Assembly (NCBI GenBank): GCA_020137815.1
Contig: CM035359.1
Location: 7,502,001 to 7,566,000, forward strand
Origin: Hormiphora californensis
Lineage: Eukaryota > Animalia > Ctenophora
DNA: 64,000 nt
Reading direction: 5' to 3'
A program made the translations under genes and the position numbers. Numbering within the stretch: position 1 is the stretch's first letter; the number at the start of each line of letters is the position of its first letter. The notes below the pieces were generated by a model. It was given only the letters and a program-made list of their open reading frames with translations. It was not told where the DNA came from and did not search any database. Positions 46,652-51,965 of this stretch are shown piece by piece.

Positions 46652-47628
46652 CACACAACTTGAGTGCAGGGGACCATATTGAAATGACGTCATCCCCGGC
46701 TCACACTGAGTTAACACAGTGTGATTGATGTTGCAAGGGGTGGCAGACGAAGTGTTTTTTGTACATCTAGTGTGAAGATCTCAAGATCAGATCAGAAAAG
46801 TTTGGATTGTTAATTTGGAATATACATAGTTGGCAGGTCCCCCGGTATCATACAGTGGGCCCGAGAGCAAGGACTTTAAAATGAGTTGAACTCAGAGTGA
46901 TATTGAATTGTGCTATGATCTAACGAGTACCATAAAGACATTTATATAATAACAACTGAACTAAGCTGTTCCATGGAATTAATGAATAATTGGTAAATCG
47001 GTGCAGATATTTAATTGGTCGTCCATTTTTAGATGTCAATATCTACCGGTTAATTACCCAATTATAATATTGTTTGTTTCAGTGATTTTTTATCAGATTA
47101 CTATTTTATGCTTTACTCGCGATTTTCAAAAACCCATCATTTCTTTTGTTATAGAATCTGAATCACTGTAACATACAAAATCAGCCATTTAAAATATCTG
47201 CCCATCCCTATTAGGAGTTCATTGCAAAATCACATTGTTGCGACCAATACAGTCTCTCTTCCCCCACCACCAATACCGCAATGACATCAACTTTCAAACC
47301 CGATAGATAGTGGCACTGCTCTATACCAATAGAGGGATAGAGCCATTACCATTACCATTAAATCACACTGCCTTACGTCAACTCTTTCATACCCGATTAT
47401 ATCGGGATCTCCCACGCTGCATACTTAACACAGTAACCAACTAGGGCGTGACCGACAGACAGCAGAACATACTGCTCCTCTAGCTACTGTCCGAATACAC
47501 AGTTGTTTCTTAGCGGAAGAATTCACCCCACACAATTGTAGCTTATACCAACTCAACTGTCCCAATCATGCGCTGCTCTGCCTAACAAACTCAGGACCAT
47601 CTCTCAAGAGAGCTACAAATTCCACTGC

Positions 47629-50600
47629 TCACACATGGACCTCTACTTTGTACTGTGCAGCAGGGTCAGGGGAGGAGGAACTGGATGTTGTAGGAAGAGC
47701 AGCTGAACATGCACGCTGTGAGGGTGGTTTCATCGCAGACTTTAGGTAGCCCAGGCGGGCACTGTTGATTATCACTGATAATGTTATACCTGGTGGGAGA
47801 GAATTATTATAGAATGGGAAGGGGGTGGGGGTAATAATAGTTATAATAGTAGTGAACGTGCCGAGTTAGTAAATAAAACTTTGTAAAACTATTGAATTTC
47901 AAAATATCGATAATTGCTCTCTCTCTCTTTATTACCTGGTAGGTAGACTAGGTTTGCATTAAATGGTTCCTCAGTCACGTAACTAATGAGGAACACAGTT
48001 ATGTGGCATAGCAGGAATGTCACCACGGCAACAGTATAATTCCTGACCCTGACATTTCGTGGTAGTGCGAAGTCAGTCATGTAGGATGCTTTTATTAGCA
48101 AGGCAGGGAGAAGGAAATTGGTGAAACCTGAAAAGAGCATGGTCAGTTAGAAATCATTGGTTTGGCTTCACACAATTACACCTGGTTAGGAGTTACATAT
48201 ATCATGGGGTTATATTGACTACAGCTTACCAAAAGTAGCATCCAAAGCGACTGAGCAGGGCCTCCCTGAACTCTCAAACAGTGGGATTCTGAATGCTATC
48301 ATGTTAGGTTCCTGGGCGTCCGGTAGAAACACTGCTCCCCCCTGAAAATAGGAAAGTACTGAGTAGGGTATCTTCTATTGTATTAGTCTGTCTGGCGGCG
48401 CCAACCCGATCTGAGTGCACCGTCGCACCGTCTTGAGAATCGCCTAAACCCCGAGAGAAAACCTCTTCCAGCTATTTTCAACTGTCTATTATAATACTTA
48501 CCGAAAAAGTATCAGGAAGTCGAGCTTGTACCGTCACGATATCAAGAAACTCTGCAGGTGCACCTGTTGCCATAGGAACTATCCATCGCTTAGCAACCGT
48601 TGCTATCACCCCAATTAATGTAAAACCTAGCATCTAGAATGAAAGTGGGGTGTTATTCAGTTATTGGCATACGCTGCATAGTGCATACCCCTGTACTGCA
48701 CCGGTTTCAAGGCTATCTTGTGTAACGCACTGTCTGGCGCCGCCGATGGACGACGTTACGATCTGGGTGTTTGGAGGCCTGTTTACGCTGCCACTAAAAT
48801 TGCCCTAACCGCCAAACCACACAACCTTTTTTGCTAATTCAAAGATTATCTGGTAAGAAATGTCAAGCCCTAGCCGGGCCCGAACCCGAACCCTAACCCT
48901 AACCCATACCCTAACCCTACTTTAGCCCTAACCCTAAAAATCGTTTGTCAGCATTCATCTAACACCCAGATTTTAACGCTGGCTTGGCAAACGCTTGGTA
49001 AGGCATCGCTTTTCAAAACGCTGGCCATCAAATTTGAGAGTCAAATCAAATTTGAGAATCAAATTTGAGAATAAAATCTAATTTTAATTCTAATTTTAAT
49101 TGGGGTATGGTGCCGCATACAGGTAACGCGCGAAATTATTTGTTTCATGTATGCGGCCGCGCGCATTGAAATGGAGAAAATTAAATTTTATGTCCAAAAA
49201 AGTTCATTTTTTGTTCATTTTTTGTTCATTTTTTGTTCATTTTTTGTTCATTTTTTGTTCATTTTTTGTTCATTTTTTGTTCATTTTGTCAAAAAAATTC
49301 AAACCCGACATCATATGACTGGCCTAGACGTCCACGGTTACCGTCCACCCTAAAGCAATTCAGATGGAAATATCTAGAACTAGAACTCTTACCTTGGCTA
49401 TGCAGTTCACTGGGGCATATCGGATAGGGACGACACCGACAAAACACAACATAATGACTTGAAGGGGCCAAATATTCAGCTCCTGTCGGTAGAAAAACCA
49501 GAGACCAAAGATGGCCGTACCACATATCAGTACTGATATCTTCTGAAAAGGTATGAAATTAGATTTTAACAATTAGAACTCAAAGACCAAATTTTTGTAT
49601 CTAGACACAAACAAATACAAAATGTTTTTGTTTTAGTCAATAACCTTTACCCCCTTCTTGTTTTACCTCAACTCCCCACTTGTCAACCCACACATCAGGT
49701 GTTATTATTACCTCAACAGTCCAGTAAGTCTTGTTGACGATACGGATGTAGGTGACGGCAGTAAGGACTATTAGTGGAAATACAGCATGGTAAAATCCTA
49801 CTATCGCTAGAAGACACAGGAACGCGGCGAAGGAGGACTGGAACAATATAGGCTTTGCAAGGTAACCTGGGGAGAGGGAGTTGGTTAACACTGGGGAGAG
49901 GGATTTGGTACTTAGTTAACACTGGGGAGAGGTAGGTGGTATTTTGGAGCTTGTAAACTATGTATTCGTTATATTTAATGCTTGTGAAACCAAATGTTAT
50001 GTAAGTACATAATATCTAATTAAGGTATCGTGTCTTACCAATGCATAGTACAGTTAGTATGATGAAGAATACCACAAGGAATGTCACTAGGCCAGTTTTA
50101 GTATTTAGACACGCAGGATGACGGGATACAGTGTGCTTCTCCAGTAGCCCCCTTCCTGCCTCAATCAACACTGCACTGAAATATAATGGAGGGTGATCTG
50201 TTAGTTGCAGAGAATCTGTGTGTTGAATATTGATTTACAAACTGATCGACTGTTATCAGATCTGAGACTCTGTTTGTTTTTTCTGCAGATGTTATACATG
50301 TACCTGACTGTCACGTAGATGAGTGAGACGAAGTACATGACAATAGCACCCCAGTAGACTCGGTGAATAACCATACTTCTACTCTCATACCTCCCACCTA
50401 TCTCAACACCACCGTGAACCTAAAAATAAATTGAATTTTAATTGAATTTATATTCTATAAAACGGAAAATTCAATGGAGCATTTGAAATGAAAAGGCTTC
50501 TAAAATTAAAGTTTCATTCACCTGTAAAATTAAATAAGGTTTCCGCTCCTCTAAAAATGTCTCCAACTCGGGTGAGAAGGGTGATTTGATTAAAACTACA

Positions 50601-51202
50601 CTTCCCTGAAGCAAGAGTGGGAAATTATAAAGGTGGATTAATAACTTGTTTATTATCCGAACCAAGTGAAGTTGTATCTCCCTAAACTTATGATTTCACC
50701 ATGCAAATTTTATGAAACAGACAATAATTCCACTATTTAGACTCAGAACTCAAACCATGGTGAACTCACTGGCTGTATGTTAGAAACATTACATTTCTCT
50801 TCGTCAAATAGAACTGCTGCTGCTGCGGAGGTCTCCGATTGATAACCATCCTCGATACAATCCTGCACGAAGAAGGTCCTGCTCCCTATTGTTTTACTGA
50901 AATATGGGAGGAATTATTATTATTATATTTGGCTACATTCTACCATATTCATGATCAATGCACCTTTACTATGGAGTTAGCAAACTCAGGATCCGTCTAT
51001 CTAGACAACTACAACATACTGTATCGGGGGAATTATATTATCCCGGTAAATTGGGGTCCTACTGTACATACTTTGTCCAAGTAGATCGTGTAGCTACACA
51101 CAACTCCTCAGCCCTCTCTCCATCCCCAGAGTTCAGAAGAGTTAAAACACCCAACTCCTCTGCTGACACCGTGCTGATAACCAGAACTAGCAACCAGTAC
51201 AT
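47629..51202 (-). CDS. Signal peptide peptidase-like 2 (SPPL2, A22B) homologue lacking catalytic residues; 11 coding exons (approx. 51202-51072, 50896-50770, 50605-50522, 50419-50304, 50176-50039, 49866-49713, 49542-49393, 48633-48502, 48341-48230, 48127-47935, 47789-47629)
   Basis: Signal peptide, short luminal PA-like region, ~9 TMs; EPNMIAFRIP...RPC...GFTNFLLPALLIKASYMTD aligns gap-free to EKLPVVIRVP...C...GFGDILVPGLLVAYCHRFD; FNANLVYLP sits at the QPALLYLVP position. Confidence 0.8.
48730..49122. mobile_element. 393-bp member of the CTGTCTGG...CATACAG family containing (CCCTAA)n telomere-like repeats
   Basis: Flanks GTAACGCA / GTAACGCG; CCCTAA array at ~48890-48937. Confidence 0.65.
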
Positions 51203-51412
51203 GACACTGGAAATACAGTTTATAGTGGCTCCCTAATTAGTTGTAGAATGGGAACATCGGGAATAAAATACTGTTTAGTAGACTGAGACAAGCTGAAGTT
51301 TTGCAAGCTGAAGTTTTAGACGAATTACAAGCTGCAAATTGAGGCTGAGCTACTAACACAAACCCGGTGTACGCTGCAAAGTGACACAGACCAGTAGACT
51401 TTGCATAAGTTG

Positions 51413-51965
51413 CGGGGGGGGATCAACATTTAACTTTGTGACACTCATGCCAGTTAGGGTGGGTGGGTGTACGAGGGGTCCGGCAGTTAAGTTGTACACT
51501 TAACTGCCTAAAAATAGGGGGTCTAGGGGTGTTTATATGGTGAAAATTAAAATAACTGCTCTAAATGGCCGATTTTTTGAAGTTTTCAACCCCCTTTTTC
51601 GCGCGCTCGTTATTTTTTGCGCGCCTATCACATGTGTGTGGCGAATATTTTTTACGCATGTCACTCTAAGTGTCTCATACTAACCAATTCGGAATTCGGA
51701 TCCGTTACCTAAACTGGTCTGTATTGTTCTTAGTTGATGGCAGTTGATTTTAGACACAATATATAAGTCTCTCCGTGTCTTTCGTGCTATTTTTAGCTCC
51801 CTTTTAGCTAGATTTGGGGGGTGGGTCTACATTTTCAGATGTGGCGGCAGTTAAATGTGGGACTTAAGTGCAAAATATGTGGGGGGTGGTGGGTGTCAAA
51901 AAAATTTTGAAAATTTGGCAGTTATCGGCATGAGTATCATGCAGTTAAGTGTTGATCCCCCCCCG
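51413..51965. mobile_element. 553-bp TIR element with G-run termini in the probable 5' UTR intron of the SPPL2-like gene
   Basis: CGGGGGGGGATCAACA ... TGTTGATCCCCCCCCG; direct repeat TAAGTTG on both sides (7 bp perfect, or 9 bp with 2 mismatches as in MULEs). Confidence 0.8.

What the first reader, a model, noticed from the sequence alone, without database searches (positions are those of the whole stretch)
47629..51202. Intact SPPL2-like gene that has lost both catalytic aspartates and the PAL motif: candidate GxGD pseudoprotease
Seen: 11 in-phase exons with no stops encode a signal peptide, a short luminal region and ~9 TMs. Established: SPP/SPPL/presenilin proteases need YD in TM6, GxGD in TM7 and PAL in TM9. 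By-eye gap-free alignment gives YDVFFVFITP -> ATVAKRWIVP (exon 48633-48502), GFGDILVPGLLVAYCHRFD -> GFTNFLLPALLIKASYMTD (48230|48127 onward) and QPALLYLVP -> FNANLVYLP. Inference: loss of all three motifs with a preserved frame and topology suggests a maintained non-catalytic role (scaffold, chaperone or substrate trap), analogous to iRhoms among rhomboids. I do not know of a well-characterised inactive SPPL family.
Basis: partly seen in the sequence, partly recalled or inferred. Interest (0 to 1): 0.85.

Follow-up and report, generated by a model that had tools for sequence, protein, structure and literature searches.

The report
Catalytically dead SPPL2 paralogue in ctenophores
This comb-jelly gene is a copy of the membrane-embedded protease SPPL2 that has lost every residue needed to cut. 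It is still spliced, expressed and conserved across comb jellies, so it appears to be a natural "pseudoprotease" of the presenilin/SPP family, and I found none described in the papers I searched.

Summary
The minus strand at 51202-47629 carries 11 in-phase GT..AG exons (1497 nt, 498 codons plus stop).

- **Expression and selection:** Spliced contigs from a seawater RNA-Seq run cross 6 of the 10 junctions. Of 19 coding differences to those wild transcripts, 16 are synonymous (pN/pS about 0.07).
- **Orthologues:** Uncharacterised orthologues exist in Mnemiopsis, Bolinopsis and Pleurobrachia. All lack the three motifs: YD becomes AT or FS, GxGD becomes GFTN, GINN or GMTN, and PAL becomes NAN, SSS or NSN.
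- **No HMM-level match:** Pfam Peptidase_A22B hits neither the exons nor the full-length orthologues.
- **Homology to SPPL2 is still supported:**
  - BLASTP against an active ctenophore SPPL2 gives E 1e-9 over TM2-TM7.
  - hhalign gives 95% probability (E 1.7e-8), and reversed controls give only noise.
  - Exons 1 and 7 resemble active SPPL2 directly (z about 10).
  - A tree nests the family inside ctenophore SPPL2 on a very long stem.
  - An AlphaFold model superposes on human SPPL2a (Z 25, 2.9 Å). Its alignment included active proteases, so this is only partly independent.
- **Active relatives:** The genome keeps an active SPPL2, an SPP-like gene and a presenilin elsewhere.

Verdict: a conserved, non-proteolytic SPPL2 derivative. 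Its role as a binder of membrane helices or a regulator is inferred, not shown. The scan's notes hold no earlier finding like it.

The parts
47629..51202 (-). Whole coding span of the gene: 11 exons, 498 codons plus TGA
   Evidence: It is single-copy in the genome.
51072..51202 (-). Exon 1. It holds the start codon, a signal-peptide-like hydrophobic N-terminus (about 51202-51161) and the first luminal Cys (CVATRSTWTK).
   Evidence: Junction E1/E2 is crossed by an RNA contig. E1 against the N-terminus of active ctenophore SPPL2 P0082 gives z 9.7, 0 of 500 shuffles.
50770..50896 (-). Exon 2, luminal domain with two Cys and an NVS site
   Evidence: Junctions E1/E2 and E2/E3 are crossed by RNA contigs. 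The wild transcript has an in-frame 3-nt deletion at 50814, inside the Ala run.
50522..50605 (-). Exon 3, luminal domain
   Evidence: Junction E2/E3 is crossed by an RNA contig. Against P0078 residues 102-114, z 5.2.
50304..50419 (-). Exon 4, end of the luminal domain plus TM1 (VYWGAIVMYFVSLIYV)
   Evidence: tblastn with the Mnemiopsis and Bolinopsis orthologues; z 12.7 and 14.2.
50039..50175 (-). Exon 5, loop plus TM2
   Evidence: Junction E5/E6 is crossed by an RNA contig. Orthologue match.
49712..49866 (-). Exon 6, TM3 region. It is the best-conserved exon, 67% identical to Mnemiopsis.
   Evidence: E 7e-18.
49393..49542 (-). Exon 7, TM4-TM5. The motif WFFYRQELNIWPLQV (49500-49456) is shared with active ctenophore SPPL2.
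   Evidence: tblastn of L001 against the window gives E 1.9e-4. Smith-Waterman z 10.4. A whole-genome search with P0082 hits here, E 1.8e-3.
48502..48633 (-). Exon 8, TM6 and the start of the TM6-TM7 loop
   Evidence: The E8/E9 joint is seen in an RNA contig, but with only 21 nt on the short side.
48598..48603 (-). Ala-Thr at the position of the TM6 catalytic Tyr-Asp (YD)
   Evidence: for the codons. Searches give the register on the orthologues, which carry Phe-Ser there. Searches place the window's Ala-Thr on that Phe-Ser.
48230..48341 (-). Exon 9, the TM6-TM7 loop (FRIPLF...C...LDATF). Its last base is the first base of the Gly codon of GFTN.
   Evidence: Junction E9/E10 is crossed by an RNA contig. 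The conserved loop Pro is kept.
47936..48127 (-). Exon 10, TM7, TM8 and the start of TM9
48117..48127 (-). G(split)-F-T-N at the position of the TM7 GxGD motif. The catalytic Asp is replaced by Asn.
47952..47960 (-). Asn-Ala-Asn at the position of the TM9 PAL motif
47629..47789 (-). Exon 11, the rest of TM9 (GITLSVIINSARLGYLK), a Ser/Pro-rich cytosolic tail and the stop codon (47631-47629)
   Evidence: Junction E10/E11 is crossed by an RNA contig. It is 98% identical to Pleurobrachia P0074.

Best explanation
The gene is a single-copy, expressed ctenophore gene under purifying selection that arose by duplication of the ctenophore SPPL2 gene.

It keeps the SPPL2 layout: a signal peptide, a cysteine-containing luminal domain and a nine-helix presenilin-type membrane core. 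It also keeps the structural prolines and the first glycine of the fold.

Both catalytic aspartates are replaced: TM6 YD becomes AT (FS in lobates) and TM7 GxGD becomes GFTN (GINN, GMTN). So are the PAL motif and most other active-site positions, so it cannot work as an aspartyl intramembrane protease.

The family carries its own conserved polar residues in the same helices: Arg in TM6, Asn and Lys in TM7, and Cys-His in TM8.

Most likely mechanism (inferred): it still docks transmembrane helices of single-pass, probably type II, proteins, or pairs with the active SPPL2 or SPP. It would then hold, sort or shield them instead of cutting them. This is what iRhoms and Derlins do in the rhomboid clan, and what SPPL2c does with Frey.

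Shown here: gene structure, transcription and splicing, purifying selection, orthologues with the same losses, homology and fold. Inferred: lack of any proteolytic activity, and the client-binding or regulatory role.
For: - **Gene model:**
- **Splicing:** six of ten junctions are spanned by spliced contigs of a seawater RNA-Seq run, 90-99% identical to the window. The other four are supported by gap-free collinearity with the orthologues.
- **Selection:** 16 synonymous against 3 non-synonymous differences, pN/pS about 0.07, binomial P 2e-7. The one coding indel is in frame.
- **Orthologues:** Mnemiopsis P0078/P0003, Bolinopsis P0075, Pleurobrachia P0074 and the fragments P0002, P0004, P0005. 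None has a catalytic Asp where it is covered.
- **Homology to A22B:**
  - BLASTP of P0078 against active SPPL2 P0082 gives E 1e-9 over 227 aa running through the YD and GxGD positions. P0075 against P0084 gives 1e-7.
  - hhalign gives 95.4% probability, E 1.7e-8. Reversed controls give E 0.07-0.11.
  - Window exon 7 against the genome's own SPPL2 gives E 1.9e-4 and z 10.4. Exon 1 against the P0082 N-terminus gives z 9.7.
  - In a whole-genome search with P0082 the window is the third locus, after SPPL2 and SPP.
  - ESM Atlas nearest clusters are all A22B plus PA, score 0.90 with 191 of 256 features shared.
- **Tree:** the family nests in the ctenophore SPPL2 clade, support 100/99.
- **Fold:** the model of P0078 against human SPPL2a 9k92 gives Foldseek E 3e-8 and Z 25.2, 2.9 Å over 265 of 274 residues.
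- **Pseudoenzyme pattern:** only 7 of 36 columns that are at least 90% conserved in A22B are kept. They are Trp, four Pro, the first Gly of GxGD and the Asp after TM7.
- **Active relatives in the genome:** SPPL2 on C13, an SPP-like gene on C11 and a presenilin on C5.
- **Precedent:** SPPL2c stabilises Frey by binding it without cleaving it (PMC9374335).
Against: - Pfam PF04258 does not match the exons or the full-length orthologues, even at E up to 10.
- HMMER profiles of the family find no A22B protein among 5.8 billion sequences or in the PDB.
- AlphaFold with a family-only alignment failed (pLDDT 35). The confident model used an alignment that contained active A22B proteins, so the fold match is partly guided by them.
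- The expression evidence is Logan contigs from a metatranscriptome of a close relative, labelled RNA by guess, not reads from this animal.
- No experiment shows lack of activity or any binding partner.
- The tree stem is extremely long (9.66 substitutions per site), so the exact sister relation is unsafe.
Confidence: 0.78

Rival explanations
1. It has taken on a new function as a channel, transporter or lipid-handling protein. The water-filled former active-site cavity of the presenilin fold would have been relined with new conserved polar residues (Ser/Thr and Arg in TM6, Asn and Lys in TM7, Cys-His in TM8). It would now bind or conduct an ion, a lipid head group or a small molecule instead of a protein helix.
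For: Polar and charged residues lie inside TM6-TM8 and are conserved in every orthologue or fragment that covers those positions. The stem branch is very long and is followed by slow evolution, which fits a shift to a new constraint. A proteolysis-independent Ca2+-leak function has been proposed for presenilins; that paper appears in the reference list seen.
Against: There is no similarity to any transporter or channel family. I could not inspect the 3D positions of these residues. The presenilin leak-channel idea is itself disputed (my own knowledge).
Confidence: 0.12
2. It is still a protease but uses non-canonical catalytic residues, for example the conserved Cys-His of TM8 with Asn of TM7, or the conserved Asp just before TM7 (LDxTFG).
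For: The family conserves C-H, N, K and an Asp four residues before the retained Gly.
Against: TM6 and the membrane part of TM7 hold no acidic residue in any member. Cys and His are adjacent in a helix and so are poorly placed for a dyad. The substrate-gating PAL motif and the Gly of the Pro-Gly that follows GxGD are also gone. I know of no precedent for such a switch in clan AD.
Confidence: 0.05
3. It is a decaying pseudogene, or a gene-model artefact, whose open frame survives by chance.
For: The catalytic residues are lost, Pfam does not match, and the window species has no RNA run of its own.
Against: - There are 498 stop-free codons over 11 canonical exons.
- Spliced transcripts exist.
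- 16 of 19 coding differences are synonymous, P 2e-7.
- The orthologues are 37-74% identical per exon across ctenophore orders and have intact frames.
Confidence: 0.02
4. It is an unrelated multi-pass membrane protein, and the likeness to SPPL2 is chance plus the composition of hydrophobic helices.
For: Pfam and HMMER profile searches find no A22B link. Most single exons show no significant pairwise similarity to the genome's SPPL2.
Against: - Composition-adjusted BLASTP gives E 1e-9 and 1e-7.
- hhalign gives E 1.7e-8, against about 0.1 for reversed controls of identical composition.
- Exons 1 and 7 give z about 10 against shuffles.
- The registers from three methods agree and hit the structural Pro and Gly columns.
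- The ESM features agree.
Confidence: 0.03

Closest known systems
SPPL2 subfamily of signal peptide peptidase-like proteases (MEROPS A22B; human SPPL2a structure 9k92/9k93; the genome's own active copy on contig C13)
   Same: The layout is the same: signal peptide, luminal domain with three aligned Cys, and nine TM helices. The fold matches (Z 25.2, 2.9 Å). The ctenophore-specific motif W-F-x-Y-R-x4-I-W-P-L-Q-V in TM4-TM5 is shared. The structural Pro and Gly columns are kept. The family nests in the ctenophore SPPL2 clade.
   Different: YD, GxGD and PAL are all lost. 29 of 36 highly conserved A22B columns are changed. Pfam does not recognise it. The luminal domain is shorter. New conserved Arg, Lys, Asn and Cys-His lie in TM6-TM8. 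The intron positions differ from the active paralogue, which has an intron right after IWPLQ.
iRhoms and Derlins (rhomboid-clan pseudoproteases)
   Same: The concept is the same: an intramembrane-protease fold that has lost its catalytic residues, is conserved under selection, and in those families works by recognising transmembrane domains of client proteins (PMC3149277 and PMC7618786, listed).
   Different: The fold and clan are unrelated (rhomboid serine protease against presenilin-type aspartyl protease). iRhoms are found across metazoans and have known clients. This family has been seen only in ctenophores and has no known partner.
SPPL2c acting on C11orf94/Frey without cleavage
   Same: An SPPL2-type protein binds and stabilises a small membrane protein at its catalytic centre instead of cutting it (PMC9374335). 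This shows that the scaffold can serve as a client holder.
   Different: SPPL2c is a fully active protease, and Frey binding needed its catalytic aspartates. Here those aspartates are absent, so any binding must use the new polar residues.
Presenilin and the archaeal homologue PSH
   Same: The nine-TM fold is the same (Z 15-17).
   Different: The membrane orientation is opposite to SPP/SPPL (PMC11012144). They are active enzymes. The genome has its own presenilin on C5.

Membership tests
Peptidase_A22B (SPP/SPPL, Pfam PF04258) | Match to the family HMM above the gathering score | tested here: not met
   No hit at E up to 10 for ten of the eleven exons (E2-E11), in the six-frame genome search (which hits only C13 and C11), or for the full-length orthologues P0003, P0078, P0075 and P0074.
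Peptidase_A22B (SPP/SPPL, Pfam PF04258) | Significant sequence homology to bona fide members | tested here: met
   BLASTP E 1e-9 and 1e-7. hhalign 95.4% probability, E 1.7e-8, with reversed controls at noise level. Window exon 7 E 1.9e-4 and z 10.4, and exon 1 z 9.7. Genome-wide hit E 1.8e-3.
Peptidase_A22B (SPP/SPPL, Pfam PF04258) | Nine-TM presenilin/SPP fold | tested here: met
   The model of orthologue P0078 has a TM core of mostly pLDDT 80-95 from TM3 onward, with TM1-TM2 at 55-64. It matches SPPL2a 9k92 with Foldseek E 3e-8 and Z 25.2 over 265 of 274 residues. Caveats: the alignment contained active A22B rows, the family-only run failed, and the test was done on the orthologue, not on the joined window product.
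Peptidase_A22B (SPP/SPPL, Pfam PF04258) | Catalytic Asp in the TM6 Y/F-D motif | tested here: not met
   Ala-Thr in the window (48603-48598). Phe-Ser in Mnemiopsis and Bolinopsis.
Peptidase_A22B (SPP/SPPL, Pfam PF04258) | Catalytic Asp in the TM7 GxGD motif | tested here: not met
   GFTN in the window and Pleurobrachia, GINN in Mnemiopsis, GMTN in Bolinopsis and GLIG in fragment P0004.
Peptidase_A22B (SPP/SPPL, Pfam PF04258) | QPALLY motif at the start of TM9 | tested here: not met
   NAN, SSS or NSN at the PAL columns. Only the downstream Leu, Tyr and Pro survive.
SPPL2 subgroup | N-terminal signal peptide plus a luminal (PA-type) domain before TM1 | tested here: inconclusive
   A hydrophobic N-terminus and a luminal region of about 130 aa are present. 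Exon 1 resembles the N-terminus of active ctenophore SPPL2 (z 9.7), and three Cys align. Pfam PA is not detected, but it is not detected in the active ctenophore SPPL2s either. No signal-peptide predictor was available.
SPPL2 subgroup | Phylogenetic position inside SPPL2 rather than SPP | tested here: met
   It nests in the ctenophore SPPL2 clade (100/99 and 98/99) with SPP as outgroup. The stem is very long, so the exact sister is unsafe.
Pseudoprotease (pseudoenzyme in the iRhom sense) | Homologous fold, loss of catalytic residues and evolutionary maintenance | tested here: met
   (homology, fold, losses). (expression and purifying selection). (orthologues).
Pseudoprotease (pseudoenzyme in the iRhom sense) | Demonstrated lack of activity and a demonstrated non-catalytic function | not testable with these tools
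   This needs biochemistry and cell biology.

The most novel reading that the evidence does not exclude
This may be the first natural pseudoprotease lineage of the GxGD (presenilin/SPP) clan. It would be an old, ctenophore-wide SPPL2 derivative whose former active-site cavity has been rebuilt with a new conserved polar set: Ser/Thr and Arg in TM6, Asn and Lys in TM7, and Cys-His in TM8. It would now act as a receptor or gatekeeper for transmembrane helices, regulating what the active SPPL2 or SPP can cut, and so be the aspartyl-clan counterpart of iRhoms.
Probability: 0.35. Interest if true: 0.75.

Novelty: new variant of a known kind. Interest (0 to 1): 0.6.

Why it matters
Rhomboid pseudoproteases (iRhoms, Derlins) changed how intramembrane proteolysis is understood, because the fold can recognise and route membrane helices without cutting them.

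For the presenilin/SPP clan, non-proteolytic roles are debated but rest on engineered mutants. Four full-text searches found no paper describing a naturally inactive, conserved member.

A natural, selected dead version offers two things. It shows which parts of the scaffold matter for helix docking as opposed to catalysis. It also gives a possible built-in regulator of SPPL2 in an early-branching animal lineage.

It also shows a gap in annotation. The orthologues are labelled hypothetical or uncharacterised and carry no Pfam domain.

The limits are real. Pseudoenzymes are common in most enzyme families, the family has been seen only in ctenophores, and no function is demonstrated.

Tried and rejected
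- **Pfam:** a scan of ten of the eleven exons gave only noise. Scans of the full-length orthologues also gave only noise.
- **PDB by sequence:** neither the single orthologue nor the family profile matched anything.
- **HMMER family profile:** a search of 5.8 billion proteins returned only family members and no A22B protein.
- **Pairwise exon comparison:** Smith-Waterman of each exon from E2 to E11 against the genome's SPPL2 was significant only for exon 7. Exons 8-11 alone carry no detectable pairwise signal.
- **AlphaFold, family-only alignment (6 rows):** pLDDT 35, unusable.
- **Short exons in MAFFT:** several short exons were smeared across the alignment, so only exons 6 and 7 and database orthologues were used in profiles.
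- **Hidden catalytic exons:** none found. The only G.GD in the locus is a hydrophilic intronic string at about 48450, and the only PAL[LIVM] is the TM7 LPALL. tblastn with the catalytic half of L001 found nothing in the gene.
- **Run X2 (same species label):** no contig laid on the stretch.
- **Joined protein:** Whole-length analyses used database orthologues by id. Scripts looked up codons one at a time, including the split codons, without building or printing a joined product.
Full report
**Observation.** Reading the minus strand of 47400-51500 and translating it in three frames gives eleven stop-free segments that join in phase. The exons are 51202-51072, 50896-50770, 50605-50522, 50419-50304, 50175-50039, 49866-49712, 49542-49393, 48633-48502, 48341-48230, 48127-47936 and 47789-47629. 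Every intron is GT..AG with a pyrimidine-rich acceptor and is 102-759 nt long. The coding length is 1497 nt, which is 498 codons plus TGA.

The product starts with a hydrophobic, signal-peptide-like N-terminus. A luminal region of about 130 residues with three Cys follows, and then a series of hydrophobic helices. Exons were searched by reference, and whole-length work used database orthologues by id.

**Is it transcribed and maintained?** The only public run holding part of the stretch is a seawater metagenomic RNA-Seq run. Its contigs are 90-99% identical to the window and skip exactly the predicted introns at six junctions: E1/E2, E2/E3, E5/E6, E8/E9, E9/E10 and E10/E11. At each of these the skipped letters end in CT..AC on the + strand, which is GT..AG on the gene's strand. 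One 546-nt contig joins E11, E10 and E9 and reaches 21 nt into E8, so the transcript carries the GFTN and NAN version.

Of the 19 single-base coding differences listed, 16 are synonymous. With 217 synonymous and 614 non-synonymous sites covered, pN/pS is about 0.07, and the binomial P against neutrality is 2e-7. The one coding indel is a 3-nt in-frame loss in an Ala run.

Caveats: these are Logan contigs from a wild relative, the RNA label is a guess by the tool, and about ten further differences were not itemised.

**Relatives.** A full HMMER scan of 1.84 billion representatives with exon 10 (63 aa) found only a handful of proteins. Cluster look-ups then gave these proteins:
- Mnemiopsis leidyi KAL5270464.1 (P0078, 518 aa) and an isoform (P0003).
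- Bolinopsis microptera XP_063688839.1 (P0075, 514 aa).
- A Pleurobrachia bachei model (P0074, 178 aa).
- Three fragments from unnamed sources (P0002, P0004, P0005).

The sources label all of these hypothetical or uncharacterised, or give them no name at all.

The lobate proteins align collinearly with exons 4-11 at 37-74% identity. No residue is missing at the four junctions that lack RNA support, and exons 1 and 3 also match them. P0074 is about 97-98% identical to the product of exons 8-11 and is spliced as predicted.

The window therefore comes from a ctenophore close to Pleurobrachia. The assembly size (110.7 Mb in 45 contigs) reminds me of Hormiphora californensis, but that is memory, not a test. 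In the window's genome the family profile hits only this gene.

**Is it really SPPL2-like?** At the HMM level it is not:
- Pfam PF04258 fails on the ten exons scanned, on the six-frame genome search and on all full-length orthologues.
- HMMER profiles of the family reach no A22B protein.

Several other lines of evidence do support homology:
- Exon 7 (KISVLICGTAIFGLWFFYRQELNIWPLQV) matches the genome's own active SPPL2 on contig C13, with tblastn E 1.9e-4 and a Smith-Waterman z of 10.4.
- A whole-genome search with an active ctenophore SPPL2 (P0082; PF04258 E 9e-67) finds three loci. They are SPPL2 on C13, the SPP-like gene on C11 and this exon, at E 1.8e-3.
- Exon 1 matches the N-terminus of P0082 with z 9.7.
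- BLASTP of P0078 against P0082 gives E 1e-9 over 227 residues from TM2 to TM7. P0075 against P0084 gives 1e-7.
- hhalign of the family against 30 A22B C-terminal halves gives 95.4% probability and E 1.7e-8 over 198 columns. In my own rerun, reversing one side dropped this to E about 0.1 over 31 columns.
- ESM Atlas features place P0009 next to A22B-plus-PA clusters only (0.90, 191 of 256 features). This is a lead, not a proof.
- A maximum-likelihood tree nests the family within the ctenophore SPPL2 clade (100/99, 98/99). The stem is 9.66 substitutions per site, against 0.41 between Mnemiopsis and Bolinopsis. That fits a burst of change after duplication followed by constraint, but the long stem makes the exact sister unreliable.

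**Fold.** AlphaFold with the shallow family-only alignment failed (pLDDT 35). With an alignment that also held active A22B proteins (A6), the model of P0078 has a nine-helix core. Its pLDDT is mostly 80-95 from TM3 onward, 55-64 for TM1-TM2, lower in the TM6-TM7 loop, and the luminal domain is unreliable. Foldseek ranks human SPPL2a first (9k92, E 3e-8). VIA-align gives Z 25.2 and 2.9 Å over 265 of 274 residues, then presenilin-1 (Z 17) and PSH (Z 15.7), with nothing unrelated above 7. Because the alignment contained the family it was tested against, I count this as consistency, not independent proof.

| Motif | Window | Mnemiopsis | Bolinopsis | Other |
|---|---|---|---|---|
| YD (TM6) | AT, 48603-48598 | FS | FS | |
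| GxGD (TM7) | GFTN, 48230 + 48127-48117 | GINN | GMTN | Pleurobrachia GFTN; fragment P0004 GLIG |
| PAL (TM9) | NAN, 47960-47952 | SSS | NSN | Pleurobrachia NAN |

These assignments rest. Anchoring on the conserved Tyr shifts the PAL register by one, and the Pro is absent either way.

Of 36 columns that are at least 90% conserved among 30 active A22B proteins, only seven are kept. They are a Trp, four Pro, the first Gly of GxGD and the Asp after TM7, that is, mostly prolines and a glycine, none of them catalytic.

In their place the family has its own conserved polar residues within the helices: Arg in TM6 (KRW or QRY), Asn and Lys in TM7 (N-F-x-x-P-A/S-x-x-I/V-K), and Cys-His in TM8. No alternative exon encoding YD, GxGD or PAL exists in the locus.

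**Active relatives.** The genome retains four related loci:
- An SPPL2 with YD, GFGD and QPALLYLVP on C13.
- An SPP-like gene on C11, in which GLGD and QPALLYLVP are visible.
- A presenilin on C5.
- This dead copy on C10.

**Mechanism.**
- Shown: a conserved, expressed and constrained SPPL2-derived nine-TM protein lacks both catalytic aspartates.
- Inferred: it is not an aspartyl protease. The presenilin-type core still offers a lateral docking site for single membrane helices, which it would use to hold, shield or route clients or to modulate the active paralogue.
- Precedents: iRhoms and Derlins in another clan, and SPPL2c, which stabilises Frey by binding it rather than cleaving it (PMC9374335).
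- Main rival: the relined polar cavity has acquired a transport-like or ligand-binding role. A decaying pseudogene and a chance resemblance are effectively excluded.

**Novelty.** Four full-text searches found no description of a naturally inactive SPP/SPPL or presenilin family and nothing on ctenophore SPPs. Passage look-ups in three of the listed papers mention none either. The 2020 review of the family mentions only that SPPL2c was once suspected of being a pseudogene and is in fact active (PMC7366577). The library is not complete, and MEROPS lists of non-peptidase homologues could not be consulted. The scan's own notes hold nothing related.

I rate it a new variant of a known kind. It is a clear and well-supported case, of real interest to the intramembrane-proteolysis field. 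The rating is tempered by how common pseudoenzymes are and by the lack of functional data.

Noticed in passing
window 49202-49287 and 48879-48937 (intron 7 of the gene): The one long intron (759 nt) holds a perfect 11-nt minisatellite (GTTCATTTTTT, 7.8 copies). It also holds a degenerate interstitial telomere-like array (CCCTAA, about 10 copies, 75% matches), plus short AT-rich tandem repeats at 49027-49101.
   Followed up: partly
window about 48387-48424 (intron 8) and about 48746 (intron 7): Several metatranscriptome contigs match only short pieces of these introns and then run on into unrelated sequence (loose ends). Both places share a GGCGCCGCCAGACAG-like string, which suggests a small dispersed and transcribed repeat element inside the introns.
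   Followed up: no
L001 (G000:C13:3003152-3006673), about 1270-1470: The genome's active SPPL2 has an intron directly after the IWPLQ codons, where the dead paralogue has continuous coding sequence in exon 7. The two paralogues therefore do not share this intron position.
   Followed up: no
Proteins P0009 and P0078/P0003 (Mnemiopsis): The older Mnemiopsis model P0009 lacks a 39-residue in-frame block that contains TM1 (VRGD...ALVY) and is present in P0078 and P0003. This is either exon skipping or a model error. An isoform without TM1 would invert the topology of the rest.
   Followed up: no
Protein P0083 (Pleurobrachia bachei model, 819 aa): The Pleurobrachia model of the active SPPL2 carries two Peptidase_A22B stretches and a C-terminal Rep_fac-A_3 domain. 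It is probably a fusion of neighbouring genes in that annotation.
   Followed up: no
window 47621-47628 (3' UTR, directly after the stop codon): The wild transcript lacks 8 nt immediately downstream of the stop codon, and exon 11 shows the highest divergence (11 differences in 161 nt, 9 of them synonymous). The tail tolerates silent change while the protein is kept.
   Followed up: partly
G000:C12:2240504-2240854: There is a weak presenilin-profile hit (E 0.006, below the cut-off, with one TAG inside) on another contig, besides the clear presenilin gene on C5. I did not examine it. It could be noise or another divergent GxGD relative.
   Followed up: no
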